Positions 8,777-64,000 of a DNA stretch of 64,000 nt are shown in pieces (position 1 is the stretch's first letter; the number at the start of each line of letters is the position of its first letter). The notes below the pieces were generated by a model. That model did no database searches and had not been told where the DNA came from. It worked only from the letters and a program-made list of their open reading frames with translations. The position numbers and the translations under genes are program-made. The stretch covers positions 93,124,001 through 93,188,000 of the forward strand of contig NC_043001.1 in the NCBI RefSeq assembly GCF_006345805.1. Reading direction: 5' to 3'. The stretch is from Octopus sinensis. Taxonomy: Eukaryota.

Positions 8777-8953
8777 TAAAGTATAGAAGCCATCATAACA
8801 TGGCTAACCACATAGGGGAGGGGGTGTTACTGTAGCTTTATAGCCCCAAGAGATCGTCGTCTCAGTTGGCTTTAGACGATCTCTTGGGACTTTAAAGCTA
8901 CAGTAACACCCCTCCCCTATGTGGTTAGCCATGTTATGATGGCTTCTGTACTT

Positions 8954-8955
<2 letters not shown>
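8777..8955. mobile_element. Foldback / MITE-like near-perfect inverted repeat
   Basis: ~82-bp arms (TAAAGTA(T/C)AGAAGCCATC...CCCAAGAGATCGTC and its reverse complement) with a few mismatches and a loop of about 15 nt. TA at both ends; the right end abuts (TA)n. Confidence 0.75.
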
Positions 8956-9010
<55 letters not shown>

Positions 9011-9102
9011 CATGCATGTATATATATATCTATATATACACACACGCAATCTCACGTATATATATACATGTATACATGTGCGTGTATGCGTGAGATTGCA
9101 TG

Positions 9103-9137
<35 letters not shown>

Positions 9138-9187
9138 GCATGCAAATATGCATATGCATACATACATGTACACTCACATACGCACAC

Positions 9188-30812: not shown

Positions 30813-32128
30813 AATATATAGTCCAGCCACTGGACTAGGTAGAAATAACAACCAAATTTCCTCAAAGTATTAAAAAAGATAAAGTGGTACTCCTTCAATA
30901 ACGTAATACTTGATGTACTATGCTTAAAAAGAACAAAAAAGAAAAAGGAAAAAGAACTGTTATATATCACCAGATATATATGGTTGGAAGACATTCCAGC
31001 ATAACTCTACTAGATTTTATGTTGACTTTGTTTTAATCAAAAGTGACAAGAACAAAGTCGAGTGGGTAATTGAAATATATATTCTATAAGGTTGTAAATA
31101 TGTTCTCTGTCTTACTGCTTCAGGAGGTATGTTTTTTTTTTAATCCTAACTATAAATCACTCGAATTTCTCGTTAACATATTTTGTTGATACTCTCGTGC
31201 AAACATAATATTCACTGATTCTTGAACTTGTTATATTTCGTTCTAACCCAGAAATCTCTCGTATTTACAAATGAAATAGAGAACCGATATTTGCTGTCTC
31301 ACTCTCTAGAAATAGACAAAAAAATATTTTTCTATCGTCTTAAAGAAGTAAGTACTCACTAGATAGGGTACTTCTGAATAATTTATATGAGAAAATATGA
31401 TAGTCTGATAAATCAGCTATAACAAATATAACAGGTATGACGATACAAATAATATCCAGTATTTATATTAACTAAATTAATTTTGATCTTTTCCAAGGAT
31501 TCTCTGAGGAACTCCTTTCTCATTTGCATTGCGAATCAAATTTTTACCAGTTTCCACTTGCATAATTCTGTTTGTGTTCCAATCTCAAACACTTATTTTA
31601 TAGATTTGGACATAATCTTTGTAACCTCTTAGATATGGCCTAAACTTATTGGTTTCTTTCATATTTATTCATAGAAATACAAATCGATCTCCGTCGGTTT
31701 CGACAATGAGTATTCAGTTTTTATATCAACTGAATTACCTGATCGGTGAATTCGAGTGTAAGCGGTTAAGTATTCCATAGCCATATGTATTCTTAAAATA
31801 ATTCTCAGGTAGAATCTGCGTGAGTGTGTGACAAGAGTGGAATACAAACCATCTCAATATAGAAAGCTTCCTGAAACTGAATCTACTTTCTTATTTTCGC
31901 TTGTTTCTATTCACTCAGTATAATGTTTACAAAAAATGTTTACAAAAAATACTGAGCTAAACCACCACGCTCAAGGAAGCCCCTTGTGGTCTACAAAAAC
32001 GTTTACATAACTACGCATGACATTTACTATGTTCAAATATATCCAAACGAACAATGTACTTGTATAATTTTAATTATACACACACACACACACACACATA
32101 TATATTTACATATATATATATATATATA

Positions 32129-32460
32129 TTAATAGCAATGGTATGACAACAAAAGAATGAATGAGACCTCGATATTATGTAAATAGAGGAATTTATCTAT
32201 AATATAATATGTGACAATTATTCGGTTGCCATAATAAAACTCCGAGTTTCGGATGTCGGGGCAGAAATCTGCTCCGGCATCTCGTCAGTTATCAAGATAA
32301 TCAAAAAATGCTATGAAAATGACCGTTAAACAAAGGGAAATTACTATGTGAGTGACCGTTATTAAGACAAAAAACCTATTAAAATGACCGTTAAATAAGG
32401 GCAAAAAACCGAAGAGGAGAAAGTAAAAAAGTAAAAAATGCGCATAGAAATTGCATATGC
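32129..32460 (-). mobile_element. Penelope-like pLTR fragment carrying a hammerhead
   Basis: T-rich upstream part with three AACGGTCA motifs, an HHR, and a ~110-nt tail ending in (TA)n. Homologous to 39013-39186. Confidence 0.65.
32233..32293 (-). ncRNA. Type I hammerhead ribozyme (GUU triplet)
   Basis: GATAA-CTGACGA-G[stem II, about 12/14 bp]C-GAAA-CTCGGAG-T-T^TTATT. Stem III is ACTC-G-GAGT. Predicted cleavage 32238/32237. Confidence 0.75.
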
Positions 32461-32668
32461 ACGCATGTACATAGATACACATGCACGCACGCACACCCAC
32501 GTACATGTGCCTATATGCATATGTTCACTCACACTCGCGTGAAACACATGCATGTATACCCACATATAAACGCAACGATACACATGTACATATACATGTG
32601 CATATATACATACCCGCGCACACGCACACACACACACACATATATGCATATGTATGTATATATATGTA

Positions 32669-32699
<31 letters not shown>

Positions 32700-32726
32700 G
32701 CATGTATGTATATATGTATGTATGTA

Positions 32727-33232
32727 TGCATGCATGTGCGTAATAAATTCGGAACATTCGACACATAGGTATAAGATATTCGTGTATATGTTTTTCTTAA
32801 TTTTACTTATCGACACAAATAAAAACAGAATGTATTTAAAAAAGCATTTTCACAGAAAAGTACGTCATATATTCATTCTTTAATGTAGCATATATATATA
32901 TATATATATATATATGCATGTATGTCTATATGTATGTATGCAAGCATGCATGTATGTATGTTTGTATATCTGTATGTATATATGTATGTATGTATGCAAG
33001 CATGCATGTATGTATGTTTGTATGTCTGTATGTATATATGTATGTATGTATGCATGCATGTGTGTAATAAATTCGGAACATTCGACACATAGGTATAAGA
33101 TATTCGTGTATATGTTTTTCTTAATTTTACTTATCGACACAAATAAAAACAGAATGTATTTAAAAAAGCATCTTCACAGAAAAGTACGTCATATATTCAT
33201 TCTTTAATGTAGCATATATATATATATATATA
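32727..33232. repeat. Tandem duplication, period 324 bp
   Basis: About 170 bp of unique sequence (TAATAAATTCGGAACATTCGAC...TAATGTAGC) at 32741 and 33065, separated by microsatellite. Confidence 0.9.
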
Positions 33233-33553
33233 TAAAGATATTTTTACAAGAAGTGAAAAATAAATGGAACGAGACACATTAATTTGACGACCTTTAATTT
33301 AGGAAGTTGTTTCCGCCTTCGTCATTCTGTATTTTGTTTAGCGGCAGATGAAAAAATGATTTTTATTTCCTTCCGATGTTGTGGCCGTAAGCTTGAAATA
33401 TTGTCTATCTGTCTGATTGCAACGCATGTCTGCCTGCATGTCAGTCTGTCTGATTGCACGCCTGTCTGCCTGCATGTCTGTCTGTCTATATGTATGGATG
33501 TATCTGTCTACCTACCTACCTACCTACCTACCTACCTACCTACCTACATCCTA

Positions 33554-33601
<48 letters not shown>

Positions 33602-36150
33602 ACTTTAGTAATCCTTCCCTGGTGTTGCAAAATAAATTACTTATCATGGCTAAAGAAGTTGACACTGAATTGTGAGGGGCTACAAAGTCATTTATTTCTT
33701 TCTTAAACATCGCTTAAAGACTGCAAAAACCGTCACCTCATACGGACATACGCCCTCTTAATACTATTATAAGAAGGATTAAAGATTACTTAGTTTCCAC
33801 TATTTTAGTTTGTTTTTGGTGGAGATTATCGTCACATGGAATAACAACGAAGAAATATTTTAAATGTTATTGGAGTTATTAAGGTCGTTCCTAGCCACGA
33901 AGCGGCGTCTTCGAAATTTTCTGTTGGTCCTAATATTTACAACTGCAGAGCAAGTAAATTATCATCCCGCTGTGGTAATCTTCCTGGAGGAATTTGTTTT
34001 CGCAAAGGAATTTCATCTTTTATCCAATTCCCTGTATCTTAAATGCATAATATTTATGTACATAGTATTTATATGCAGTATCTGATCGGCGCTTCGTTCT
34101 TATATGCATTGTGTGCATTGATTGACTCGTTGATATCGAGAAAGTCAAACCCATCGCTTTTTTTGAAGGCGCATATCCTTTTTCCTTGTCCATGATGTTA
34201 ACACATTTGAAAGCTATTTTCCTTCATACAATAAAAAATTGTTTGAATGCTATCAAGAAAATGTTTACCATCATTTTGTAGATAATTGCTTTTGTCAAGA
34301 ATTTCTTTTTTAAGGAGACTGTTCGGTTTTGTCCTGAAGTTACAGTCAGCATTTTAGATGTTTCTGTTGGTCCATCAAAGTTTATGCATTATTAGGCTCT
34401 CGAGATTCTTCATGCAGCCGTAACTTGGACTGACGTTGTTTTGGTACTTCTTGGGAAATGGCTTTAAATTGTGGTTCATATATTTCATTCGTTGTCTGCT
34501 TGATTTTCTCCCATTTCTCATACACACATAATTATACCATACGTTATATATTTATTATATCATACCTTGATACTATGTGAACTAAGATCACCGTTGACAG
34601 GTCACTGGCATTTATAGAGTGTTAAACTCTTTCTGTATGGAAGTTAGGGACTCTTTCATAGAGTAACTGCTGCATTTGGTGAGTATATAAAAAAGTTTAG
34701 CTGCTTGTTTATCTGGAGACTTTCAGAATGATGTGGAACCCAATAAGGTCTGAAAATCGATTAAGGTTTTTGATTGATTCTACTTTTCAGTCACATCTGG
34801 GCCATGCTGGGGCGTTCATCATTTGTTCAATCTGCAGAGAAATGGCTACAATTTTCCCTGTTTATAACTATACCATGTTCATACATGCATGCATGCTACA
34901 TACATACATACATACATACACACATACATACATACACACATACATACATACATACATACATACATACATACATACATACATACATACACACACATATGTG
35001 TTTATCTATCTTTCTTTCGCTCTTCCTCTCCCTCTTTATATATACATATGTGTTTATGTGTGTATGTATGTGCCTGTGTGTGTTATGAACAGTGAAGAAA
35101 CATATCTATCTATCTATATATCTACTTCACTCTCTTTCTTTAAGAATTTAGCTATCTCTCTCTTTCACTCTCTCCCTTTATTCTCTCTATATATATTAGT
35201 ATGTGTATATATATTAGTATGTGTATATACATACACACATGTATATATATATATATGCATGTATGTATGTATGTATGTATGTATGTATGTATGTATGTAT
35301 TATCTCACATATACACACAGAGGAAGACCCTTATAAAAACACAAAAGAAATGAATATAAACAGCACGAAAGCGTTTATGGTACAAGAAATGAATTTTTAT
35401 TCTTTTTGTTTCGTATTGATTTTGAGTTCCATATATATCTAATATAGTCGTATTATATTAGTCGCTGAGGGTTAGATAGAAAGTTAAAAACGTAGTGTGT
35501 TCTGAATAGAAAAGCAGGGAGGGATTTGTCCTCATCATTATTCTGCGTAAGAGGCTCACACATTAACACACACATACACACACACAGAGGCAAGCACATA
35601 TACACATACACACTGGCATACACTCATACATACACAACCATACCTGCATTCATAGACTCATACACATACACATATATTCTGAGCAGACTATTTTCTGATT
35701 CAATTATGAAGGAAAATTTCCTTGAGAATGGATAAATAACATCTAACAATGTACTTTTATGATAGTAGATAATATAATAAGTAAGTAGTGCTAGAAACAG
35801 ACTAAATACAACAGCAACAACATAAGGAATAATAAAAATAACCGAACAAATACAACGTCTGTGTTATCATCTTTCTCAACAGCAACAACACACACAATAT
35901 AATAGAAATGTTAGAAATTACTACAATAAAATACGGAGACAGCTTCATTTGGTTCCATAAATATTTACTAAATATTTGTAGGTGTTGAGAAAGAAAAATT
36001 TAACAAACATCTACCTCTCTGTCTGTCTCTCTGAATATATATCTACAAATACGTACGGACATACATACATACACGCACACACACACACACACACACACGC
36101 ACACACAGACACACAGACACACACACAGACACAAACACACAGACACACAG

Positions 36151-36188
<38 letters not shown>

Positions 36189-36238
36189 GTATGTATATAT
36201 ATATAAATATTCAAATATATATATATATACATACATCT

Positions 36239-36309
<71 letters not shown>

Positions 36310-36473
36310 GATATATGCACACACACACACACACAGATATATACAGGAATATATATATATATATATAAGAATATATTTCTACCCGTGTTCAATAAAATAA
36401 CTTCGTTTTCTACTCTCTCTCTATATACACATATATATTTATGAAAATAAATAAATATATGTATATATAAATA

Positions 36474-36537
<64 letters not shown>

Positions 36538-37551
36538 ATGCGTGTGTGTGCATAATGTATATATAAACGTAAATAATAATGATGAAGAAGATGGTACACC
36601 GTGCATTTACTTATGACGAAAGGATTCCCGCGACAGGCCTAACTGGACTTTACTCATCAGAGAGTATGGAAGTATACTAGACATAGATTCTACACATTTC
36701 TTACATGGGTGTATATTAAGCTATTCAAGTCTTTGCCCAAATCACAAAGAAAACATGCATACATGCATGCACAAACATACATACATATTCAAAAAAGATT
36801 AAACGTAGTATAATAGAATAATGTAACAGACAATGAGAATAAGAGTTTAGTTGTTACAGGTTTTGCTCTTCAACAGTTTCCATATCTTTAATCCGTCGAT
36901 CTATCAATGTGGATAAATAGATTCGTTGACGGATTAAAAAGATAGAAAAACGGGTGGGTAGATATATCGACACATAGTTAAACCAAAGAGAAATAATCAT
37001 AGCGAATAGCTGTGGATGTTACTTCTACCTTTTGGTATAGCAACCCAGAGGTTGATGTCATGCTGGGGTATCGCCTATTGTTATTTTTTTTTTAGTTAAT
37101 TGGTTTTAAAGTTTATCTGTATTGTTAGAGAGTAGACAGATTCATACACTGAACGAAATGTAAGTAGAACATGGTAGAAAGATATATTGATTGATTGCCC
37201 CTTTTACATCTTCTCAAGAATCGGATGTTCAGAAAAACATAACATTTCATCATACATTTTTCAAAATAAACCTGGTATTTCCACAGGTACTGCTAGTCTA
37301 TATATTAATGCGCTAAGACCAAATGCGTTACGCTGTCATGTGGTTAGGTGAACGGAGAGGCGAAGAGGGAAGGAAAAGTTGGAAGAGGGAAATTAAAAAG
37401 GTAGGACATAGATGTTAATGACGTATGGTAGAAGGTAAGTAATAGTTATTACGTGGCTAAAAATTTGTTGGAGGGAGTGATATAGAAAGAGTTAGAAATA
37501 CTATGTTGGCAGAGGTGAAATGTTCAGGTAGTCAAGTTAAAAAAACAAAGC

Positions 37552-37599
37552 AGAGAGAGAGAGAGAGGAGAGAGGAGAGAAAGAGAGAGAGAGAGAGAG

Positions 37600-37632
<33 letters not shown>

Positions 37633-37644
37633 AAGAGGAGAGAG

Positions 37645-37685
<41 letters not shown>

Positions 37686-37695
37686 GAGGGAGGGA
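37552..37695. repeat. (GA)n purine tract
   Basis: Direct inspection. Confidence 0.95.
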
Positions 37696-38256
37696 AGGGA
37701 AAATTTAAGCCCCAGATAATATATTTTTTTGTGACTAATAAGAAAATAATATATTAGTTTTCAGTTTTTATCCCATTGCCAAATACATCGATGGGTAGAA
37801 CAGTAAAATGAAGGGTTATATTCGCTATAACAACAAACTTATCATAGACAGATTATGAGGTAAAATATGAATAAAAAGAATACAGTAGTTATTTACAACA
37901 GATAAGAAAGCGCGCTCGAGATAGAATAGGAAATGAAACTGTGAGAGAAGGTCAGAAAAATCTTAACATATAATGGAAAGCATAAACGTTAATGACACGA
38001 ATATTCTCTGTAATCAACACTCAAGCTCTTAGATTTATAAATTAACACCTGAAATATTGAGAGAATGGAGAAGCCATGTTCCCTCAATTACAGCGTTATC
38101 CAGAAGAACTGAAAGGTATTTTAAAATGAAAGTAATGCGGAATATGCAATTTCAAAACGTAACACTAATTTTTATGATTCTCTGTAAACTTCCAGCCATC
38201 TAAAAATTTCGTATTTACCGTGGGATCTCCATGATAATAACATGTATGTATTACAC

Positions 38257-38292
<36 letters not shown>

Positions 38293-38293
<1 letters not shown>

Positions 38294-39000
38294 TAGCATT
38301 AAAGACCCGTCGTTGCCGGGTCATAGTGCTAGTGCATGTATATATGTGTATATATATGTGTACATATTACATGTACATCTATATATATACATCTACACAT
38401 AAAATGCAAAATACAAAGTTATATCTTGATATCGCTAGTGATAACAATACTCAAAATATATAACAGACTGGAATTGTTAGCTCTTCTTTTTTTCTCTACA
38501 TTGTATACTTTATAGACAATAGTCTTTTCTTTAATTAAATGTTTTATTATCCATCTGGACAATTCCATTTCTGCACGCTAATTTTATTTTTAATTTATTC
38601 CCATTCATGTGAAACCACTTATTCAAGTTCAAATCATTGATGCAATTTTATACCAATTGCTATTTTAACTTTTGTTATGTTACGATTATAATTATTAGTT
38701 ACTACATATAATTCAATTGTTATTATTATTTTTATTGTTAAAATGAAAGCATCTGACATAAGATAGAGAAATATTTTTGTTTCACTTTTAACACGTAATA
38801 CTGAAATAGTGAAGATATGATATTGCTATGGGCTTGCTCTAGGCAAGAAGTTGAACATTTCTTATTGCCCATGAAACTACATGGACCCTAAGTAAGGCAT
38901 GTGTAAAATTTGAATGAAATTGGTTGTGTAGTTCTCAAGTTTTAGGGAAACACACAGACAGACAGACGGACACATATTCTCAGTTTTATATATATAAAGA
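38293..39000 (-). mobile_element. Non-autonomous Helitron (second family)
   Basis: A|TCTTTATATATATAAAAC...(TCTG)n 5' end; GACCCGGCAACGACGGGTC hairpin and CTAG|T 3' end, inside (TA)n. Confidence 0.8.
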
Positions 39001-39012
39001 TATATATATATA

Positions 39013-39186
39013 TTGATAGAAATGGTAAGACAAAAGAACGAAATAGATATCGATATTATGTAAACAGAGGAATTTATCTGTAAATATAATATGTGACAAT
39101 TATTCGGTAGCCATGATAAAACTCCGAGTTTCGGATGTCGGGGCGGAAACCCACGCCACCATCTCTTCAGTTATCCGGCCATCGAA
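39013..39186 (-). mobile_element. Penelope-like HHR-bearing fragment
   Basis: Homologous to 32129-32293; flanked by (TA)n on both sides. Confidence 0.65.
39108..39182 (-). ncRNA. Type I hammerhead ribozyme (GUU triplet)
   Basis: GATAA-CTGAAGA-G[stem II]C-GAAA-CTCGGAG-T-T^TTATC. Stem I extends via TGGCC/GGCTA. Predicted cleavage 39120/39119. Confidence 0.78.
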
Positions 39187-39243
39187 ATATATATATATAT
39201 ATATTACATACATATAACATAATATCCATCCATCCATCTATCT

Positions 39244-39321
<78 letters not shown>

Positions 39322-39323
<2 letters not shown>

Positions 39324-40313
39324 CTATAGGGGATTAGTGGAGGGGAGGTACGACGACGAGCTCGGGGCGAACCTGGACGTCGACGAGGAATACCTGACCC
39401 GCCTGTTCGGGACGACTTTCGGGCCAGGGCCCATGGACAACTTCCAGAGATTCCTGGCCTGGCAGTGCTACCGAGAAGCGCTACCCGTTCGGGATAAGCT
39501 CTCGACCTGCCCGAGATGCGGTCAGAGCGACGAAACCGTTCTGCACGCACTCGTGCAGTGTCCAACAATTTCCGACTTGTGGGCTTATGTCGAACAACTG
39601 CTGTCACGTGTGGGACAAGTCAGTTTATCAGCTGAGTCTATCGTCAATATTGTCACGCCTCCTTCCTTCAAACAGGAAGGAAGAGCTATTTTCATCATCC
39701 TAGTGGCTATGGCGAAAGAATGTATCTGGTAGACGCGTCTGAAAGGATTGGAGACAAACACTTTCCTCTCTGGTCAATCTCTCATCAACTTCTTCAAGTA
39801 CCACTTGAAAAGGAAAGTGAGAGTAGAGAGGCAAGTTTTGTCTAGCGAATGTTTTAAAAAAAGATGGGTGAATGTAGCAAGGATGGCACGTATGAATGAC
39901 GAAGCCACCTTGAGCATAATCCTATGAATCCAGAAATTGAAAACAGAGGGTTACCCACTTGCAAACAAATGTGGTAACATATAACAATATTGACCGAAGT
40001 TATCGTGGTCTTTTTCGTAGGCTTTTCTTCCCACGGATAAATCTTATCTGCTTCCCCCTTTACATCGTACATCATGACACTGTGATATACAATCCCTATT
40101 GATCGTTTTCTTTTCCTCTTCCCCTTTTTTTCCTCTTTTTTTCTTTTTTATTTTTCTTTTCCTTTTTTTCCCTTTTTTTTCCTTTTCCCCTTTTACGATC
40201 CCTTTTGATCGAAAACCTACGCCACTTTCTTTTTTTTTTCATCCCACAAAAGAAAAGCTCTACCTTGTAATTTGTCCCATCTGTGTGCAGCCCTGTGTGG
40301 CCAATAAAGAAAC
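39322..40313 (+). mobile_element. 5'-truncated Tx1/L1-like LINE (ORF2 C-terminus and 3' UTR)
   Basis: FYRGLVEGRYDD...CPRCGQSDETVLHALVQC (zf-RVT-like), premature stop at 39730-39732, frame continues to about 39927. Pyrimidine-rich 3' UTR and AATAAA; (TCTA)n on both flanks. Confidence 0.8.
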
Positions 40314-48983: not shown

Positions 48984-49339
48984 GAAGTAAATGAAGTCAA
49001 TAGATAAATAAGCAAAATATCTATAATGAGATGCCAAATGAAAATCGATAGATGAGAGAAATCACTCCTATGGTAAATCTTATGAATGGATTTTAATTTC
49101 CCTCCAAGAGAGTTCTTACACGCATATATATTCTTTTCTTTTTCTTCTTAATATTTCAGCCTTGAGGTTACTGCCATGCTGGAGCACCGCCATATATATA
49201 CATACATTCATGCACAAACACACACAACTCAATATGTAGACGCATATTCGTGTATCTATCATCATTCCCTCTCTCCCTCTCTCTATCTATCCCCCTATCC
49301 ACCTATCTACCTATCAATATACATTTACATATATATATT

Positions 49340-49690
49340 ATATAGCAAATATTCGCTAGTTGGGTGTCTGGCATGGTTTGTCCGATGTTACAGATATCGG
49401 ACGGGTATGTTTGATTCTTAGTATTTTCAAATCTAACTAAATCAGAAGAAATCTCTGAGCTGATGAAGGAAAAGTGGCGTTTTACCCACAAATCCAGAAA
49501 CAGACTGTCCTCGGGTATCGTATATGGATGTGATCTTCTGTTTTTCCCTTATACCTATGTGAGTTATTTTTCTGAGTATGCATTGTCTGGAGACTTTTAT
49601 TTGCAGTTGAAGAAATAGCCAAATTTTTGGCTGCTATTTCTGAAAAGTTCGGTGTGTGGTAAAGTGAATTCTTTTACTTTACCATATTTT
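49340..49690 (+). mobile_element. Dispersed Penelope/retrozyme-like fragment related to the 598-bp unit
   Basis: HHR followed 100 nt later by GAAGAAATAGC..GCTATTTCT..TTCGGTGTGTGGTAA, as in the array unit; AT/(TA)n flanks. Confidence 0.6.
49443..49539 (+). ncRNA. Type I hammerhead-like ribozyme (GUC triplet; A-A at 10.1/11.1)
   Basis: TCTGAG-CTGATGA-a[GGA..GTGG/CCAC..TCC]a-GAAA-CAGACTG-T-C^CTCGGG. Stem III is ACAG-A-CTGT; distal stem I is CAGAAGA/TCTTCTG. Predicted cleavage 49509/49510. Confidence 0.65.
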
Positions 49691-49715
49691 TATAAATTTT
49701 TATAATAATATATAT

Positions 49716-49760
<45 letters not shown>

Positions 49761-49870
49761 ATATATATATATATATAATATATATATCAAGACAGAGATA
49801 AATCGATAAACATATGTAATTATGGTATATATATGGATATATATTGCCTTTATTCATCTATCTATCTCTG

Positions 49871-49915
<45 letters not shown>

Positions 49916-50028
49916 ATATCTATCTATATATCTATCTATCTATCTATTATCTATCTAATATCTATATATATATATATATATATAGATATATATGAATATT
50001 TATATGTATATATATGTATGTATATATA

Positions 50029-50072
<44 letters not shown>

Positions 50073-50162
50073 ATATATATTTGTATATATATACTTATCA
50101 ATGTATATATATTACTGTAAGAATATTAATATATATATCTATAGATTTATATATATATACTA

Positions 50163-50204
<42 letters not shown>

Positions 50205-54091: not shown

Positions 54092-54760
54092 GTCAAATTT
54101 TCTTCTCAAGTGAAACTTGAAAAAGTTGACGAGGGCTTGGCCAAAGAGGAAAGTATCTGAATTTAACCCTTTCAAACAATTCCACTATATTACCTCTTTT
54201 GCTATAGCCACCAGAAAAATGAAAATTGCCAGCCCCTCCCGATTAAAGGGGGCCTGCGGAACAATCTTCCCCGTAGATTCAGCTGATCCGTCCTACACCC
54301 AGCTGCAGCTGTTCGACATAAACCCATAGATCAGCAGTGCTCGGGCACTGGATGAGTGCGTTCAGAACGGTTTCGTCGCTCTGAGCGCACCACGGGAAGG
54401 CCCGGCTAAAGGACACTTCCGTGCCCGTAAAGTTTATCCCGAACAGGCAGCGCCCCATGGTAACACTGCTAGGCGAGGGATTTCTGGAAGTTATCCATAG
54501 GTCCCGGCCCGAAAGTTCTTCGAAACAGACCAGTAAGTTGATCCCCGTTGACGCCTGGAGTTTCCCGAGAACGTCGTCGCGCTTTTCCTTCACAAACCCT
54601 CTATAGAACGCCAGTGTGGAACTACTATCGATCTCATTGCCCGACTGTGGGAGGGTTGTGGGCGCTTGACGGCACTCGAGGTGTCAAGCGCCCTTCCTCG
54701 GTCTAGCCCTATTGGCCAACAGGGCCGACATATAGGGTACAATACAGTGGACAGTGGCGG
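54092..54760 (-). mobile_element. Tx1/L1-like LINE fragment, related subfamily
   Basis: Frameshifted FYRGFVKEKRDD...CAQSDETVLNALIQC...AIFIFLVAIAKE...NFFKFHLRRK aligns by eye to the 39322 element; broken off at (ATT)n. Confidence 0.8.
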
Positions 54761-56503: not shown

Positions 56504-56871
56504 ACTTTTATTCTTTTACTTGTTTCAGTCATTTGACTGCCGCTATGCTGGAACACCGCATTTAGTCGAACGAATCGACCCCAGGACTAATTCTTTGTAT
56601 ACCAACAACTTATTCTAATGCTCATCATTTCCGAACCGCTAAGTAATGGAGACGTAAACACACCAAACATCGGTTGTCAAGTGATAGCGGGGGAAACACA
56701 CGCACACACACATACACACATACACGACAGGTGTCTACCAAATCCACTCACAAAGCTTTTGTCGGCCCGAGGCTATAGTTGAAGATACTTGCCCAAGGTG
56801 CTACACAGTGGGACAGAACCCGGAAACCATGTGGTGGGAAGTAAGCTTCTTACCACACAGCCACTCCTGTG

Positions 56872-56874
<3 letters not shown>
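56504..56874 (-). mobile_element. SINE family A
   Basis: Full reverse-complement consensus directly upstream of the (TA)n that precedes the array. Confidence 0.85.
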
Positions 56875-56918
<44 letters not shown>

Positions 56919-56922
<4 letters not shown>

Positions 56923-57009
56923 TAAGCAATAAGGGTTCAGCAACGAATTGCCTTACCACATACCGAATTTAGAAATAGCAGTCAAAGGGTTATAGCTATT
57001 TCTTCTACT
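56919..57009 (-). repeat. 91-bp inverted copy of array sequence 57108-57198
   Basis: Exact reverse complement by eye; joined to (TA)n on the left. Confidence 0.92.
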
Positions 57010-60000
57010 TTAAAAGAAACATGTTTGATAGATTGCGGTTAATTCATTCTCTCTTACCTGTTTGTGTCAGCCTTCCAATTGCTGTTTTTACTGAGATCTC
57101 CCTTTTTAGTAGAAGAAATAGCTATAACCCTTTGACTGCTATTTCTAAATTCGGTATGTGGTAAGGCAATTCGTTGCTGAACCCTTATTGCTTAGTATTA
57201 CTTAAATTTTCCTCAATGAGGCTTTTACATGCCGAAGACTACTTGGTGTAATTGATAATTATTCCAAATTAATTATTTCACCCTTCATTATTACGGATAA
57301 CCATATTTTATCTCAGTAGATGACCACAGCATCTGTTTGGCTGCACGCGGGTGGGAAGGGGCTGTTGACACAATCGTTTCATTCACAAATTTGAATTCGG
57401 TGATACTAGTTGAGGATTCTAGCTCGCTCTGATACTGAGTTGAGTGGTACCTCCTAGTATCTCAAAATCATATATAATCATTTATGATTATAGTATTCCA
57501 CGCTGAAGAGAAAAGAAGTTTCGGTAAGATAGAATTATTTAATATAATATTTTAATTCTTATGCTTTCCTAAAACTTGATTTCGAAACGTACGTCCGTGG
57601 ATAACTTTAAAAATGTTGATAGATTGCGGTTAATTCATTCTCTCTTACCTGTTTGTGTCAGCCTTCCAATTGCTGTTTTTACTGAGATCTCCCTTTTTAG
57701 TAGAAGAAATAGCTATAACCCTTTGACTGCTATTTCTAAATTCGGTATGTGGTAAGGCAATTCGTTGCTGAACCCTATTGCTTAGTATTACTTAAATTTT
57801 CCTCAAATGAGGCTTTTACATGCCGAAGACTACTTGGGTAATTGATAATTATTCCAAATTAATTAATTTCACCCTTCATTATTACGGATAACCATATTTT
57901 ATCTCAGTAGATGACCACAGCATCTTGTTTTGGCTGCACGCGGGTGGGAAGGGGCTGTTGACACAATCGTTTCATTCACAAATTTGAATTCGGTGATACT
58001 AGTTGAGGATTCTAGCTCGCTCTGATACTGAGTTGAGTTGGTACCTCCTAGTATCTCAAAATTCAATATATAATCATTTATGATTATAGTATTCCACGCT
58101 GAAGAGAAAAGAAGTTTCGGTAAGATAGAATTATTAATATTTAATATTTTAATTCTTATGCTTTCCTAAAACTTGATTTCGAAACGTACGTCCGTGGATA
58201 ACTTTAAAAATGTTTGATAGATTGCGGTTAATTCATTCTCTCTTACCTGTTTGTGTCAGCCTTCCAATTGCTGTTTTTACTGAGATCTCCCTTTTTAGTA
58301 GAAGAAATAGCTATAACCCTTTGACTGCTATTTCTAAATTCGGTATGTGGTAAGGCAATTCGTTGCTGAACCCTTATTGCTTAGTATTACTTAAATTTTC
58401 CTCAAATGAGGCTTTTACATGCGAAGACTACTTGGTGTAATTGATAATTATTCCAAATTAATTAATTCACCCTTCATTATTACGGATAACCATATTTTAT
58501 CTCAGTAGATGACCACAGCATCTTGTTTTGGCTGCACGCGGTGGGAAGGGGCTGTTGACAATCGTTTCATTCACAAATTTGAATTCGGTGATACTAGTTG
58601 AGGATTCTAGCTCGCTCTGATAGAGTTGAGTTGGTACCTCCTACTAGTATCTCAAAATTCAATATATAATCATTTATGATTATAGTATTCCACGCTGAAG
58701 AGAAAAGAAGTTTCGGTAAGATAGAATTATTTAATATTTAATATTTTAATTCTTATGCTTTCCTAAAACTTGATTCGAAACGTACGTCCGTGGATAACTT
58801 TAAAAATGTTTGATAGATTGCGGTTAATTCATTCTCTCTTACCTGTTTGTGTCAGCCTTCCAATTGCTGTTTTTACTGAGATCTCCCTTTTTAGTAGAAG
58901 AAATAGCTATAACCCTTTGACTGCTATTTCTAAATTCGGTATGTGGTAAGGCAATTCGTTGCTGAACCCTATTGCTTAGTATTACTTAAATTTTCCTCAA
59001 ATGAGGCTTTTACATGCCGAAGACTACTTGGTGTAATTGATAATTATTCCAAATTAATTAATTTCACCCTTCATTATTACGGATAACCATATTTTATCTC
59101 AGTAGATGACCACAGCATCTTGTTTTGGCTGCACGCGGGTGGGAAGGGGCTGTTGACACAATCGTTTCATTCACAAATTGAATTCGGTGATACTAGTTGA
59201 GGATTCTAGCTCGCTCTGATACTGAGTTGAGTTGGTACCTCCTAGTATCTCAAAATTCAATATATAATCATTTATGATTATAGTATTCCACGCTGAAGAG
59301 AAAAGAAGTTTCGGAAGATAGAATTATTTAATATTTAATATTTTAATTCTTATGCTTTCCTAAAACTTGATTTCGAAACGTACGTCCGTGGATAACTTTA
59401 AAAATGTTTGATAGATTGCGGTTAATTCATTCTCTCTTACCTGTTTGTGTCAGCCTTCCAATTGCTGTTTTTACTGAGATCTCCCTTTTTAGTAGAAGAA
59501 ATAGCTATAACCCTTTGACTGCTATTTCTAAATTCGGTATGTGGTAAGGCAATTCGTTGCTGAACCTTATTGCTTAGTATTACTTAAATTTTCCTCAAAT
59601 GAGGCTTTTACATGCCGAAGACTACTTGGTGTAATGATAATTATTCCAAATTAAATAATTTCACCCTTCATTATTACGGATAACCATATTTTATCTCAGT
59701 AGATGACCACAGCATCTTTTTTGGCTGCACGCGGGGGGGAAGGGGCTGTTGACACAATCGTTTCATTCACAAATTGAATTCGGTGATACTAGTTGAGGAT
59801 TCTAGCTCGCTCTGATACTGAGTTGAGTTGGTACCTCCTAGTATCTCAAAATTCAATATATAATCATTTATGATTATAGTATTCCACGCTGAAGAGAAAA
59901 GAAGAGTTCGGTAAGATAGAATTATTTAATATTTAATATTTTAATTCTTATGCTTTCCTAAAACTTGATTTCGAAACGTACGTCCGTGGATAACTTTAAA

Positions 60001-63000
60001 AATGTTTGATAGATTGCGGTTAATTCATTCTCTCTTACCTGTTTGTGTCAGCCTTCCAATTGCTGTTTTTACTGAGATCTCCCTTTTTAGTAGAAGAAAT
60101 AGCTATAACCCTTTGACTGCTATTTCTAAATTCGGTATGTGGTAAGGCAATTCGTTGCTGAACCCTTATTGCTTAGTATTACTTAAATTTTCCTCAAATG
60201 AGGCTTTAAATGCCGAAGACTACTTGGTGTAATTGATAATTATTCCAAATTAATTAATTTCACCCTTCATTATTACGGATAACCATATTTTATCTCAGTA
60301 GATGACCACAGCATCTTGTTTTGGCTGCACGCGGGTGGAAGGGGCTGTTGACACAATCGTTTCATTCACAAATTTGATTCGGTGATACTAGTTGAGGATT
60401 CTAGCTCGCTCTGATACTGAGTTGAGTTGGTACCTCCTAGTATCTCAAAATTCAATATATAATCATTTATGATTATAGTATTCCACGCTGAAGAGAAAAG
60501 AAGTTTCGGTAAGATAGAATTATTTAATATTTAATATTTTAATTCTTATGCTTTCCTAAAACTTGATTTCGAAACGTACGTCCGTGGATAACTTTAAAAA
60601 TGTTTGATAGATTGCGGTTATTCATTCTCTCTTACCTGTTTGTGTCAGCCTTCCAATTGCTGTTTTTACTGAGATCTCCCTTTTTAGTAGAAGAAATAGC
60701 TATAACCCTTTGACTGCTATTTCTAAATTCGGTATGTGGTAAGGCAATTCGTTGCTGAACCCTTATTGCTTAGTATTACTTAAATTTTCCTCAAATGAGG
60801 CTTTTACATGCCGAAGACTACTTGGTGTAATTGATAATTATTCCAAATTAATTAATTTCACCCTTCATATTACGGATAACCATATTTTATCTCAGTAGAT
60901 GACCACAGCATCTTGTTTTGGCTGCACGCGGGTGGGAAGGGGCGTTTGACACAATCGTTTCATTCACAAATTTGAATTCGGTGATACTAGTTGAGGATTC
61001 TAGCTCGCTCTGATACTGAGTTGAGTTGGTACCTCCTAGTATCTCAAAATTCAATATATAATCATTTATGATTATAGTATTCCACGCTGAAGAGAAAAGA
61101 AGTTTCGGTAAGATAGAATTATTTAATATTTAATATTTTAATTCTTATGCTTTCCTAAAACTTGATTTCGAAACGTACGTCCGTGGATAACTTAAAAATG
61201 TTTGATAGATTGCGGTTAATTCATTCTCTCTTACCTGTTTGTGTCAGCCTTCCAATTGCTGTTTTTACTGAGATCTCCCTTTTTAGTAGAAGAAATAGCT
61301 ATAACCCTTTGACTGCTATTTCTAAATTCGGTATGTGGTAAGGCAATTCGTTGCTGAACCCTGATTGCTTAGTATTACTTAAATTTTCCTCAAATGAGGC
61401 TTTTACATGCCGAAGACTACTTGGTGTAATTGATAATTATTCCAAATTAATTAATTCACCCTTCATTATTACGGATAACCATATTTTATCTCAGTAGATG
61501 ACCACAGCATCTTGTTTTGGCTGCACGCGGGTGGGAAGGGGCTGTTGACACAATCGTTTCATTCACACATTTGAATTCGGTGATACAGTTGAGGATTCTA
61601 GCTCGCTCTGATACTGAGTTGAGTTGGTACCTCCTATAGATCTCAAAATTCAATATATAATCATTTATGATTATAGTATTCCACGCTGAAGAGAAAGATG
61701 TTCGGTAAGATAGAATTATTTAATATTTAATATTTTAATTCTTATGCTTTCCTAAAACTTGATTTCGAAACGTACGTCCGTGGATAACTTTAAAAATGTT
61801 TGATAGATTGCGGTTAATTCATTCTCTCTTACCTGTTTGTGTCAGCCTTCCAATTGCTGTTTTTACTGAGATCTCCCTTTTTAGTAGAAGAAATAGCTAT
61901 AACCCTTTGACTGCTATTTCTAATTCGGTATGTGGTAAGGCAATTCGTTGCTGAACCCTTATTGCTTAGTATTACTTAAATTTTCCTCAAATGAGGCTTT
62001 TACATGCCGAAGACTACTTGGTGTAATTGATAATTATTCCAAATTAATTAATTTCACCCTTCATTATTACGGATAACCATATTTTATCTCAGTAGATGAC
62101 CACAGCATCTTGTTTTGGCTGCACGCGGGTGGGAAGGGGCTGTTGACACAATCGTTTCATTCACAAATTTGAATTCGGTGATACTAGTTGAGGATTCTAG
62201 CTCGCTCTGATACTGAGTTGAGTTGGTACCTCCTAGTATCTCAAAATTCAATATATAATCATTTATGATTATAGTATTCCACGCTGAAGAGAAAAGAAGT
62301 TTCGGTAAGATAGAATTATTTAATATTTAATATTTTAATTCTTATGCTTTCCTAAAACTTGATTTCGAAACGTACGTCCGTGGATAACTTTAAAATGTTT
62401 GATAGATTGCGGTTAATTCATTCTCTCTACCTGTTTGTGTCAGCCTTCCAATTGCTGTTTTTACTGAGATCTCCCTTTTTAGTAGAAGAAATAGCTATAA
62501 CCCTTTGACTGCTATTTCTAAAATCGGTATGTGGTAAGGCAATTCGTTGCTGAACCCTTATTGCTTAGTATTACTTAAATTTTCCTCAAATGAGGCTTTT
62601 ACATGCCGAAGACTACTTGGTGGTAATTGATAATTATTCCAAATTAATTAATTTCACCCTTCATTATTACGGATAACCATATTTTATCTCAGTAGATGAC
62701 CACAGCATCTTGTTTTGGCTGCACGCGGGTGGGAAGGGGCTGGTTGGCACAATCGTTTCATTCACAAATTTGAATTCGGTGATACTAGTTGAGGATTCTA
62801 GCTCGCTCTGATACTGAGTTGAGTTGGTACCTCCTAGTATCTCAAAATTCAATATATAATCATTTATGATTATAGTATCCACGCTGAAGAGAAAAGAAGT
62901 TTCGGTAAGATAGAATTATTTAATATTTAATATTTTAATTCTTATGCTTTCCTAAAACTTGATTTCGAAACGTACGTCCGTGGATAACTTTAAAAATGTT

Positions 63001-64000
63001 TGATAGATTGCGGTTAATTCATTCTCTTTACCTGTTTGTGTCAGCCTTCCAATTGCTGTTTTTACTGAGATCTCCCTTTTTAGTAGAAGAAAAATAGCTA
63101 TAACCCTTGACTGCTATTTCTAAATTCGGTATGTGGTAAGGCATTCGTTGCTGAACCCTTATTGCTTAGTATTACTTAAATTTTCCTCAAATGAGGCTTT
63201 TACATGCCGAAGACTACTTGGTGTAATTGATAATTATTCCAAATTAATTAATTTCACCCTTCATTATTACGGATAACCATATTTTATCTCAGTAGATGAC
63301 CACAGCATCTTGTTTTGGCTGCACGCGGGTGGGAAGGGGCTGTTGACACAATCGTTTCATTCACAAATTTGAATTCGGTGATACTAGTTGAGGATTCTAG
63401 CTCGCTCTGATACTGAGTTGAGTTGGTACCTCCTAGTATCTCAAAATTCAATATATAATCATTATTGATTATAGTATTCCACGCTGAAGAGAAAAGAAGT
63501 TTCGGTAAGATAGAATTATTTAATATTTAATATTTTAATTCTTATGCTTTCCTAAAACTTGATTTCGAAACGTACGTCCGTGGATAACTTTAAAAATGTT
63601 TGATAGATTGCGGTTAATTCATTCTCTCTTACCTGTTTGTGTCAGCCTTCCAATTGCTGTTTTTACTGAGATCTCCCTTTAGTAGTAGAAGAAATAGCTA
63701 TACCCTTTGACTGCTATTTCTAAATTCGGTATGTGGTAAGGCAATTCGTTGCTGAACCCTTATTGCTTAGTATTACTTAAATTTTCCTCAAATGAGGCTT
63801 TTACATGCCGAAGACTACTTGGTGTAATTGATAATTATTCCAAATTAATTAATTTCACCCTTCATTATTACGGATAACCATATTTTATCTCAGTAGATGA
63901 CCACAGCATCTGTTTTGGCTGCACGCGGGTGGGAAGGGGCTGTTGACACAATCGTTCATTCACAAATTTGAATTCGGTGATACTAGTTGAGGATTCTAGC
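57007..64000 (+). repeat. Tandem array of ~598-bp HHR-containing units (retrozyme-like satellite)
   Basis: About 11.7 near-identical units with periods of 596-600 bp; runs off the window end. Confidence 0.97.
57494..57603 (+). ncRNA. Type I hammerhead ribozyme, first of 11 copies in the array
   Basis: CCACG-CTGAAGA-G[long stem II]C-GAAA-CGTACG-T-C^CGTGG. Predicted cleavage after 57595, 58192, 58788, 59386, 59984, 60582, 61181, 61778, 62378, 62978 and 63578. Confidence 0.9.

What the first reader, a model, noticed from the sequence alone, without database searches (positions are those of the whole stretch)
57007..64000. Tandem array of ~598-bp units each encoding a hammerhead ribozyme: candidate cephalopod retrozyme / circular-RNA system
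Seen: 11 intact copies of CCACG-CTGAAGA-G...C-GAAA-CGTACGT-C^CGTGG at 596-600-bp spacing, no coding ORF, and differences mostly 1-bp indels. Established: newt satellite 2, schistosome Sm-alpha, cricket pDo500 and metazoan non-LTR retrozymes are tandem HHR repeats whose transcripts self-cleave into monomers that can circularise, and are thought to be mobilised by Penelope-like RTs. Inference: this locus yields ~598-nt linear or circular RNAs and is a large, possibly undescribed retrozyme family. Novelty needs a database check.
Basis: partly seen in the sequence, partly recalled or inferred. Interest (0 to 1): 0.95.

Follow-up and report, generated by a model that had tools for sequence, protein, structure and literature searches.

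The report
Octopus hammerhead-ribozyme tandem repeat (retrozyme)
A non-coding 601-bp DNA unit carrying a self-cleaving hammerhead ribozyme motif is repeated head-to-tail at least 11.7 times in what looks like an octopus genome; it is a new member of the known "retrozyme" class, and the way it was inserted points to Penelope-like retrotransposons as its helper.

Summary
Eleven complete motifs, CCACG-CTGAAGA-[74-77 nt helix II]-GAAA-CGTACGT-C^CGTGG, lie on the + strand at 596-600 bp spacing, and the array runs off the window end. The consensus unit is 601 bp, 34% GC and non-coding. Copies differ about 1%, mostly by private homopolymer indels that look like long-read noise.

The motif has every conserved hammerhead core base and three helices. 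Helix III is 2 bp plus a palindromic loop. A dimer fold gives the double hammerhead, as in newt and axolotl repeats. The circular + strand RNA is unusually structured (z = -7). No Rfam hammerhead model matches; I attribute this, untested, to the ~75-nt helix II.

- The left edge is (TA)24, then an inverted 91-bp partial unit, then the forward array starting 8 nt past the predicted cleavage site. This is the published insertion signature of Penelope-like elements.
- Diverged relatives lie next to (TA)n at 49.45-49.69 kb and in Octopus vulgaris.

SINE matches support an octopod host.

Verdict: a new member of the known metazoan non-LTR retrozyme kind, with an unusually long unit and helix II. 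Cleavage, circles and transcription are untested.

The parts
57007..64000 (+). Head-to-tail array of the 601-bp unit. It comprises a first unit starting at unit position ~9, ten full units, and a last unit (1-424) cut by the window end. Predicted cleavage sites follow C at 57595, 58192, 58788, 59386, 59984, 60582, 61181, 61778, 62378, 62978 and 63578.
60483..60587 (+). Representative hammerhead motif; the other ten start at the positions given in the observation check. Helix I is UCCACG/CGUGGA (6 bp), followed by a 2x2 internal loop and further pairs. The core is CUGAAGA. Helix II is GAAA/UUUC (4 bp), a 2x2 AG/GA internal loop, then a long imperfect extension (74-77 nt in all). Then come GAAA, helix III (AC/GU, 2 bp) with a GUAC loop, and C17 as the cleavage site.
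60688..60778 (+). Unit positions 105-195, shown here in one copy. They hold the hairpin AGAAAUAGC...GCUAUUUCU and the downstream GGUAAGGCAAUUCG segment. This is the part of the unit conserved in the diverged relatives, and it is the part present as the inverted copy.
56919..57009 (-). Inverted partial unit (unit 105-195, 91/91 identical to the consensus). It abuts the (TA)n on its outer (unit 195) side and joins the forward array through an ACT microhomology. A 5-nt GAAAC insertion lies just inside the first forward unit at 57016-57020.
56874..56921 (.). (TA)24 microsatellite flanking the insertion on the left. It is the presumed target site.
   Evidence: PMC8557442 for (TA)n as a preferred PLE target
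49454..49515 (+). Hammerhead-like motif of a diverged relative: UCUGAG-CUGAUGA-A-GGA..UCC-A-GAAAC-AGAC-UGUC^CUCGGG. It keeps a 6-bp helix I of different sequence. It has an A.A, or an extra A on each side, at the base of helix II, so it may be decayed.
49541..49674 (+). Segment homologous to unit 41-173, on the same strand and colinear with the motif above. The hairpin segment begins 95 nt after the predicted cleavage site here, against 104 nt in the unit. An (AT)n tract follows at 49708-50203.
   Evidence: nhmmer E=1.8e-5; score 55 vs shuffles 22.4+-2.6

Best explanation
The locus is a young tandem array of a non-autonomous, non-coding retroelement of the metazoan 'non-LTR retrozyme' kind, in an octopod genome.

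Inferred life cycle:
1. The + strand is transcribed through several units.
2. Each unit's type-I hammerhead has a helix III too weak to fold alone (2 bp). Two neighbouring hammerheads pair through the 8-nt palindrome ACGUACGU into a double hammerhead and cut after GUC.
3. [quoted passage not shown]
4. A host RNA ligase (RtcB type) can close the monomers into highly base-paired circles.
5. Circular or multimeric RNA is copied into DNA by the reverse transcriptase/GIY-YIG endonuclease of a Penelope-like element. Copying is primed from a nick in a (TA)n microsatellite at UA-rich internal sites of the RNA. This produces multimeric head-to-tail DNA plus a short inverted 5'-truncated copy on the other side.

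Shown by sequence: the array, the complete ribozyme core and helices, the strong + strand structure, the (TA)n/inverted-copy junction, and the dispersed relatives next to (TA)n.

Inferred: transcription, cleavage, circularisation, the helper element and the template form.
For: 1. There are 11 of 11 exact core motifs with intact helices I and III. The chance rate is about 0.015 per 114 kb, and there are no other strict hits in the window.
2. All conserved positions are present: C3 U4 G5 A6 N7 G8 A9, G10.1-C11.1, G12 A13 A14, A15.1-U16.1 and C17, with the GUC triplet.
3. The geometry is a 6-bp helix I and a 4-bp helix II, each followed by a 2x2 internal loop. These are the helix lengths described for canonical metazoan type-I hammerheads (PMC4209133).
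4. Helix III alone is +1.7 kcal/mol, while the palindrome duplex is -11.2. The MFE of two 136-nt segments is the double hammerhead, -59.2 against 2 x -23.4. This matches the dimer-dependent newt and axolotl ribozymes (PMC7229834).
5. The circular + strand monomer has an MFE of -162.5 kcal/mol, z = -7.0 against dinucleotide shuffles, and contains helices I and II. The minus strand gives z = -3.4, and 8 control chunks give +1.0 to -4.6.
6. GC is 34%, there is no ORF, and the units are head-to-tail multimers. All of these are listed traits of non-LTR retrozymes.
7. The left edge is (TA)24, then an inverted 5'-truncated copy, then forward tandem copies. This equals the PLE insertion architecture and target bias described in PMC8557442.
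8. The forward array begins 8 nt 3' of the predicted cleavage site (sequence).
9. Relatives next to (TA)n are found in three places:
   - window 49454-49674 has a hammerhead-like motif at the colinear place;
   - O. vulgaris L008 1567-1749 is about 80% identical to unit 113-298 and flanked by (TA)n on both sides;
   - another O. vulgaris hammerhead-like element has an inverted plus forward layout between two (TA)n tracts (L007 8862-9293).
Against: - No Rfam hammerhead model matches the motif at gathering score or at E<=10. I attribute this to the ~75-nt helix II, but could not test a trimmed version.
- The canonical loop1-loop2 tertiary contact is absent in its usual form.
- There is no usable covariation. 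The 11 copies are near-identical, and the only relative with a hammerhead-like motif is non-canonical at the base of helix II and is not its own MFE.
- The unit (601 bp) is longer than the 150-450 bp given for the class.
- No Penelope-like RT/EN ORF is in the window.
- The right end of the array is outside the window, so target-site duplication and the predicted 3' junction cannot be seen.
- No expression data could be reached.
Confidence: 0.72

Rival explanations
1. It is a satellite DNA that merely carries a hammerhead relic. A single insertion of a Penelope-like terminal repeat or hammerhead element was amplified locally at the DNA level (unequal crossing-over, replication slippage or eccDNA rolling circle). 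It is not itself mobile through RNA. The ribozyme may or may not still work.
For: - Only one array is seen; the other copies are fragments.
- The 2026 preprint 10.64898/2026.07.22.740005 proposes exactly such local amplification after a PLE insertion.
- Near-identical copies are also expected after recent DNA-level expansion.
Against: - The intact core in 11 of 11 copies, the very strong + strand-specific structure and dispersed relatives at other (TA)n sites fit an RNA-mediated element.
- The array's 5' end lies 8 nt from the predicted RNA cleavage site.
- There is no higher-order repeat pattern; 67 of 73 variant columns are private.
Confidence: 0.2
2. The array is the repeated terminal part (pseudo-LTRs) of an autonomous Penelope-like element whose RT/endonuclease ORF lies beyond the window end.
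For: PLEs carry hammerheads in pseudo-LTRs and insert as partial tandems with an inverted 5'-truncated copy upstream (PMC8557442, PMC4209133). The right side is unseen.
Against: - More than 11 consecutive complete non-coding units is not the usual two-copy pseudo-LTR layout.
- No RT or GIY-YIG signal is found anywhere in the window.
- The hammerhead has canonical 6-bp/4-bp helices I and II and a 2-bp helix III with a palindromic loop. It is not the minimal, helix III-less type described for animal PLEs.
Confidence: 0.05
3. The hammerhead motif arose by chance in an ordinary minisatellite, or the tandem or inverted structure is an assembly artefact.
For: - Rfam models do not recognise the motif.
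- Homopolymer indels show that the assembly is noisy.
- Fold-back junctions can be long-read artefacts.
Against: - The descriptor's chance rate is about 1.6e-4 per 601-nt unit on both strands.
- A second hammerhead-like motif sits at the colinear place in a diverged relative.
- The same inverted-plus-forward layout between (TA)n tracts occurs in an independent O. vulgaris assembly for another hammerhead-like element, and it is described in the literature.
Confidence: 0.03

Closest known systems
Metazoan non-LTR retrozymes (Cervera & de la Pena 2020, PMC7229834; coral, mussel, axolotl)
   Same: - Type-I hammerhead in every unit of a head-to-tail, non-coding, low-GC tandem repeat.
- Predicted highly self-paired monomer RNA.
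- Weak helix III that favours dimeric cleavage, as in axolotl.
   Different: - The unit is 601 bp against the ~170-400 nt RNAs (150-450 bp repeats) described.
- Helix II is extended to ~75 nt beyond an internal loop, instead of a 4-bp stem capped by loop 2.
- Expression and circles are not shown here.
- The host is a cephalopod, for which I found no report.
Newt satellite 2 / axolotl HHR_Amex repeats
   Same: Tandem genomic repeats whose hammerhead has a 1-2 bp helix III with a palindromic tetraloop and works as a double hammerhead. Here the 8-nt palindrome is ACGUACGU.
   Different: Those are 330-350 bp units with conserved loop1-loop2 contacts. They occur in vertebrates, in 10^5 copies.
Penelope-like elements and their non-autonomous derivatives (PMC8557442; PMC4209133; preprint 10.64898/2026.07.22.740005)
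   Same: - Insertion layout: head-to-tail copies, an inverted 5'-truncated copy at the upstream edge, and a (TA)n microsatellite target.
- Hammerhead in the repeated part.
   Different: - There is no RT/GIY-YIG ORF in the window.
- The hammerhead has a 2-bp helix III with a palindromic loop and 6-bp/4-bp helices I and II. It is not the minimal helix III-less type described for most animal PLEs.
- (TA)n preference is documented for Naiad, which lacks canonical hammerheads, and a microsatellite bias was hypothesised for Neptune. Which clade would be the helper is therefore open.
Cave-cricket pDo500 and Schistosoma Sm-alpha hammerhead repeats
   Same: Animal repeats of a few hundred bp (about 500 bp for pDo500) that carry a type-I hammerhead.
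   Different: No sequence similarity was tested. Sm-alpha is a dispersed SINE-like element rather than a long array.
Plant LTR retrozymes (PMC4918200)
   Same: The RNA size class (600-1000 nt), the non-coding nature and the circular RNA model are shared.
   Different: Those have type-III hammerheads inside ~350-bp LTRs, a tRNA-Met primer binding site, a polypurine tract, 4-bp TSDs and high GC. None of these is seen here.

Membership tests
Hammerhead ribozyme, type I | Conserved core: C3 U4 G5 A6 N7 G8 A9, G10.1-C11.1, G12 A13 A14, A15.1-U16.1, H17 | tested here: met
   CUGAAGA-G...C-GAAA-C-GUAC-GU-C^ is exact in 11 of 11 copies.
Hammerhead ribozyme, type I | Three helices around the core, with helix I open | tested here: met
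   Helix I has 6 bp plus an extension, helix II has 4 bp plus a long extension, and helix III has 2 bp plus GUAC. The constrained fold is -22.3 against an MFE of -23.4 kcal/mol.
Hammerhead ribozyme, type I | Match to the curated covariance models (Rfam hammerhead families) at gathering score | tested here: not met
   There is no hammerhead hit at gathering score or at E<=10 on 56800-59400. The likely cause is the 74-77 nt helix II, but this was not tested directly.
Hammerhead ribozyme, type I | Tertiary contact between loop 1 and loop 2 | tested here: inconclusive
   The 6-bp/4-bp spacing is kept and both helices are followed by 2x2 internal loops. The canonical loop nucleotides cannot be recognised.
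Hammerhead ribozyme, type I | Covariation supporting the helices | tested here: inconclusive
   The copies are near-identical. The one relative (49454-49515) keeps a 6-bp helix I with two pairs changed on both sides and two on one side, but n=2 and the motif is non-canonical.
Hammerhead ribozyme, type I | Site-specific self-cleavage | not testable with these tools
   This needs in vitro transcription of monomer and dimer constructs.
Metazoan non-LTR retrozyme | Type-I hammerhead in every unit of a head-to-tail tandem repeat | tested here: met
   There are 11 motifs at 596-600 bp spacing. The preprint's definition of an 'active' retrozyme is met.
Metazoan non-LTR retrozyme | Monomer of 150-450 bp (RNAs of ~170-400 nt) | tested here: not met
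   The consensus is 601 bp. The authors mention constructs and circles from 150 to >1000 nt only as a possibility.
Metazoan non-LTR retrozyme | Low GC (<45-50%), non-coding, no LTR | tested here: met
   GC is 34.4%. The longest frame is 80 codons and there is no protein homologue. The junctions are simple head-to-tail. PBS and PPT were not searched for specifically.
Metazoan non-LTR retrozyme | Stable, highly self-paired monomer RNA | tested here: met
   The circular MFE is -162.5 kcal/mol, z=-7.0, with 64% of bases paired.
Metazoan non-LTR retrozyme | Expressed as linear and circular unit-length RNAs | not testable with these tools
   No transcriptome of the host can be searched by DNA here.
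Penelope-like element (autonomous) | ORF with telomerase-like RT and GIY-YIG endonuclease between the repeats | tested here: not met
   There is no such ORF in the window. The only RT-related hit is a LINE-type zf-RVT fragment at 39337-39732. Sequence beyond 64000 is unseen.
Penelope-like element (insertion signature, also of its non-autonomous derivatives) | Partial or multiple tandems, an inverted 5'-truncated copy at the upstream edge, and microsatellite ((TA)n) target bias | tested here: met
   (TA)24 lies at 56874-56921, the inverted unit 195->105 at 56919-57009, and the forward array from 57007. These were compared with PMC8557442.
Plant LTR retrozyme | Type-III hammerheads in LTRs, with PBS, PPT and 4-bp TSD | tested here: not met
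   The hammerhead is type I and there are no LTRs.
Viroid-like / deltavirus-like RNA replicon | Ribozymes in both polarities; not encoded in host DNA | tested here: not met
   No ribozyme motif is on the minus strand. The element is a genomic DNA array.

The most novel reading that the evidence does not exclude
Octopus genomes hold a large, so far undescribed set of hammerhead-bearing non-autonomous retroelements. At least three or four sequence families appear in about 118 kb sampled. All insert into (TA)n microsatellites with the Penelope-type forward/inverted layout. Their 3' junctions fall at different UA-rich internal positions of the unit (about 195, about 175-195, and about 298). That would be direct genomic evidence that the template is a circular (or multimeric) RNA primed internally by the nicked (TA)n target. 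It would also give the first mechanistic link, by insertion signature, between animal retrozymes and a specific (TA)n-targeting Penelope-like endonuclease. The 601-nt unit with a 75-nt helix II would be a new structural variant of the retrozyme hammerhead.
Probability: 0.3. Interest if true: 0.6.

Novelty: new member of a known kind. Interest (0 to 1): 0.42.

Why it matters
Retrozymes are the main known source of ribozyme-made circular RNAs in animals. The review literature says their repeats show no motif that reveals which retrotransposon mobilises them (PMC7761336).

This locus shows a clean insertion edge: a (TA)n target, an inverted 5'-truncated copy, and an array that starts next to the cleavage site. 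That edge matches Penelope-like elements. It is a different kind of evidence from the sequence phylogeny in the 2026 vertebrate preprint.

It also extends the class to cephalopods and to a longer unit with an extended helix II. Standard covariance models miss this motif, so such elements are probably under-counted.

If the RNA is abundant in octopus tissues, it would be a ready system for studying ribozyme-derived circles in a neurobiologically interesting animal.

Tried and rejected
- **Rfam scans.** Gathering on the whole window gave no hammerhead hit. E-value mode also gave none among the listed matches on 56800-59400, 49300-49800, 32000-39400 and the O. vulgaris loci L007 and L008 (its 48 lowest-scoring rows were not shown). 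The many miRNA 'hits' are microsatellite or hairpin artefacts, including the MIR6224 hit on the 91-bp inverted repeat.
- **Protein route to related loci.** A concatenate of all unit reading frames found nothing.
- **Exact-pattern scans.** JGI metagenome contigs and IMG/VR were scanned for the hammerhead with its helix I and III flanks, with no hits.
- **Host identification through run accessions.** LINE-fragment homologues led to SRR11869384 and related runs, and to ERZ23872314. No paper cites them. The SINE peptide search did work.
- **Exact look-up of a window ORF** to fetch flanking contig sequence found nothing on record, so the right end of the array could not be reached.
- **Pfam on the best non-repetitive ORFs** found only a LINE zf-RVT fragment and no Penelope-like RT/EN. 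The 905-aa ORF near the O. vulgaris fragment is a C2H2 zinc-finger gene.
- **Extending the 49.5-kb homology.** Homology upstream of its hammerhead-like motif, and across unit 1-105, is not significant on its own. Only unit ~41-173 is supported.
- **Pol III transcription** was considered and rejected. Several T runs of four or more occur in both strands of the unit (sequence).
- **Selection on the core.** There are 0 variants in 319 core, helix I and helix III bases against about 3.6 expected. This is too weak to use, and it is confounded by the homopolymer bias of the errors.
Full report
**Observation**

The + strand from about 57007 to the window end is a head-to-tail array. They start at 57498, 58094, 58690, 59288, 59884, 60483, 61082, 61681, 62279, 62879 and 63479, with spacings of 596-600 bp. 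TRF missed the array only because its longest period is 500.

Cutting at the predicted cleavage sites and aligning the units gives a 601-bp consensus. BLAST of that consensus shows the following:
- ten full units at 98.2-99.8% identity;
- a first unit that starts near unit position 9-14;
- a last unit (1-424) truncated by the window end.

The differences are 48 deletions, 10 insertions and 21 substitutions. Of 73 variant columns, 67 are private to one copy, and 36 of 48 deletions fall in homopolymers. Every copy is shorter than the consensus. This is the pattern of uncorrected long-read errors, so the true copies are probably almost identical and the array is young.

The unit is 34.4% GC. Its longest stop-to-stop frame in a trimer is 80 codons. 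A concatenate of all its frames finds no protein homologue among 5.8 billion sequences.

**The ribozyme motif**

Read as RNA, each unit has these parts:
- Helix I is UCCACG/CGUGGA.
- The core is C3 U4 G5 A6 A7 G8 A9.
- The G10.1-C11.1 pair opens helix II.
- G12 A13 A14 follow helix II.
- A15.1-U16.1 and C15.2-G16.2 close a GUAC loop.
- C17 is the cleavage nucleotide, in a GUC triplet.

A strict descriptor (helix I >=4 bp, helix II >=4 bp, helix III >=2 bp with A-U at its base, H17) hits 10 of 11 copies. The 11th has a 1-nt deletion in helix II. The descriptor hits nothing else in the window on either strand, and it gives 0.015 hits per shuffled 56.9 kb scanned on both strands.

Helix I has 6 bp followed by a 2x2 internal loop and more pairs. 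Helix II has 4 bp followed by a 2x2 AG/GA internal loop and then a long imperfect extension, 74-77 nt in all. Six and four base pairs are the helix lengths given for canonical metazoan type-I hammerheads (PMC4209133). The usual capping loop 2 is replaced by an internal loop and an extension, so the tertiary contact cannot be assessed.

Helix III alone is unstable (+1.7 kcal/mol). ACGUACGU is an 8-nt palindrome whose duplex is worth -11.2 kcal/mol. The MFE of two 136-nt segments is exactly the double hammerhead, -59.2 against 2 x -23.4 kcal/mol. This is the arrangement described for newt and axolotl repeats, which cleave poorly as monomers and well as dimers (PMC7229834).

No Rfam hammerhead model matches, at gathering score or at E<=10 in a 2.6-kb slice. 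I attribute this to the ~65-nt excess in helix II, but I could not test a trimmed version. It is recorded as a membership test that was not met.

**The whole unit as RNA**

Folded as a circle, the + strand consensus reaches -162.5 kcal/mol with 64% of bases paired. Dinucleotide shuffles give -119.3 +- 6.2, so z = -7.0 and 0 of 100 shuffles are as stable. Helices I and II of the hammerhead are part of the global MFE. The minus strand gives -129.4 (z = -3.4). Eight control 601-nt chunks of the window give z from +1.0 to -4.6. The structure is therefore strong and biased to the strand that carries the ribozyme, as expected for retrozyme RNAs.

**The left edge**

The array is preceded by (TA)24 at 56874-56921. 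An inverted copy of unit positions 195->105 follows at 56919-57009, 91/91 identical to the consensus. It is joined through an ACT microhomology to the forward array, which begins at unit position 9. A 5-nt GAAAC insertion lies at 57016-57020.

Craig et al. (PMC8557442) describe insertions of Penelope-like elements in just these terms:
- high 5' truncation;
- partial or multicopy head-to-tail tandems;
[quoted passage not shown] The forward array starts 8 nt downstream of the predicted cleavage site. This would be expected if the template RNA had a hammerhead-made 5' end. It is a post hoc observation with about 1.5% chance.

**Relatives**

nhmmer with the unit finds one more place in the window, 49541-49667, matching unit 41-166 (E = 1.8e-5). 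A local alignment of the hairpin segment (unit 105-173 with 49605-49674) scores 55 against 22.4 +- 2.6 for shuffles.

A relaxed hammerhead descriptor (one unpaired base allowed on each side of helix II; 0.05 hits per 114 kb of shuffles) finds UCUGAG-CUGAUGA-A-GGA..UCC-A-GAAAC-AGAC-UGUC^CUCGGG at 49454-49515. It is on the same strand, and its predicted cleavage site lies 95 nt before the hairpin segment; in the unit the distance is 104 nt. Helix I is again 6 bp but with a different sequence: two pairs changed on both sides and two on one side. The core is intact.

The base of helix II in this relative is A.A. The motif is not its own MFE, and Rfam does not see it. It may be a decayed copy. Homology outside unit ~41-173 is not significant by itself. 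An (AT)n tract follows at 49708-50203.

**Host and cross-species evidence**

The window's abundant SINE, translated, finds its best matches in 'hypothetical predicted protein [Octopus vulgaris]' entries on chromosome-scale records. Three 20-kb O. vulgaris loci (GCA_951406725.2) were fetched through these matches. They carry the same SINE head.

In L008, positions 1567-1749 are about 80% identical to unit 113-298 (nhmmer E = 7e-18). This fragment is flanked by (TA)n on both sides.

In L007, another hammerhead-like element has a 57-nt helix II and an AC-GGUU-GU helix III. It lies between two (TA)n tracts, as a diverged inverted partial copy followed by a forward copy.

The window also holds two copies of a third, short hammerhead-like family on the minus strand (39115-39175 and 32232-32294). 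Each ends about 130 nt downstream in (TA)n.

So hammerhead-bearing short elements associated with (TA)n appear common in octopus DNA, at roughly seven in 118 kb sampled. That is a rough figure from a small sample.

The 3' junctions of the main family to (TA)n differ: unit ~195 at the array edge, ~175-195 at 49.6 kb, and ~298 in L008. This fits internal priming on a circular or multimeric template, but n = 3.

**Interpretation**

The sequence meets the working definition of an animal non-LTR retrozyme. It has a type-I hammerhead in every unit of a non-coding, low-GC tandem repeat, with a highly paired monomer (PMC7229834; preprint 10.64898/2026.07.22.740005). It departs in unit length (601 against 150-450 bp) and in the extended helix II.

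The review literature states that these repeats show no motif that identifies their helper element (PMC7761336). The junction described here is such a clue, and it points to Penelope-like machinery. No Penelope-like ORF is in the window, and the right end of the array is unseen.

Rivals are ranked as follows:
- DNA-level satellite amplification of a hammerhead-bearing fragment (0.2);
- the repeated terminus of an autonomous element beyond the window (0.05);
- chance or artefact (0.03).

Transcription, cleavage, circularisation and the helper are all inferred.

**Novelty**

Full-text searches found no paper that treats hammerhead ribozymes or retrozymes in cephalopods. The only co-occurrences are Craig et al., on cephalopod Naiad remnants, and an unrelated twister study. 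The supplement of the 2020 retrozyme paper does not mention octopus. Dfam and Repbase could not be queried.

I rate this a new member of a known kind.

Noticed in passing
window 39115-39175 (-) and 32232-32294 (-); elements about 39200-38995 and 32300-32130: These are two copies of a different short hammerhead-like family: (U)GAUAA-CUGA[A/C]GA-GAUG..CAUC-C-GAAAC-UCG-GAGUU^UUAU. Each is followed by about 130 nt of shared sequence and ends in (TA)n. Copy A also has (TA)n on its 5' side. One extra C lies between helix II and G12. Rfam does not match them.
   Followed up: partly
L007 8862-9293 (O. vulgaris OX597820.1): A hammerhead-like element with a 57-nt helix II (9081-9168) lies between two (TA)n tracts, preceded by a diverged inverted partial copy (about 8880-8960). 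This is the same forward/inverted layout as at the array edge.
   Followed up: partly
L008 2647-2704 (-) and L007 17992-18037 (+): Two further hammerhead-like motifs occur in O. vulgaris. One has a perfect 6-bp helix I (AUUCCA/UGGAAU) and a 3-bp helix III. The other is of the minimal, Penelope-like type, with an unpaired A after A9.
   Followed up: no
five of the six extra motifs: Five motifs carry an unpaired nucleotide between the 3' strand of helix II and G12. This recurs across unrelated octopus hammerhead-like families. I do not know it as a described variant. It may mark inactive copies or a lineage-specific variant.
   Followed up: no
window 56919-57197: The inverted partial unit and the first forward unit form a perfect 91-bp inverted repeat separated by about 95 nt. 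It produces a spurious MIR6224 hit in Rfam. If transcribed, it would give a long hairpin RNA.
   Followed up: partly
unit positions 41-66 (e.g. window 57044-57069): TTCTCTCTTACCTGTTTGTGTCAG resembles the head of the abundant octopus SINE (TTACTCTTTTACTTGTTTCAGTCATTTGACTG). This causes weak nhmmer hits at SINE heads in L007 and L008. It could be shared origin or chance; this was not resolved.
   Followed up: partly
window 517, 9587(-), 9890, 44104, 56523 and others: There are many copies of a SINE shared with O. vulgaris. Its translated frames give the only 'protein' matches of the window to named records.
   Followed up: yes
window 39337-39732 (+) and 54114-54683: These are fragments of the C-terminal zf-RVT region of a LINE-type reverse transcriptase (Pfam PF13966, E=1.3e-5, just below cut-off). 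A second, inverted, related fragment lies near 54.1-54.7 kb. Homologues exist only in ENA and Logan contigs.
   Followed up: partly
whole window: Microsatellite density is extreme: 135 TRF rows, mostly (TA)n, (TATC)n, (ATAC)n and (AC)n. This supplies many potential (TA)n targets. The microsatellites also generate dozens of false miRNA matches in Rfam E-value mode.
   Followed up: no
L008 4540-7257 (+): An intronless 905-aa C2H2 zinc-finger ORF (16 fingers) lies 3 kb from the retrozyme-like fragment in O. vulgaris. It is consistent with the zinc-finger gene expansion known for octopus (my own knowledge).
   Followed up: yes
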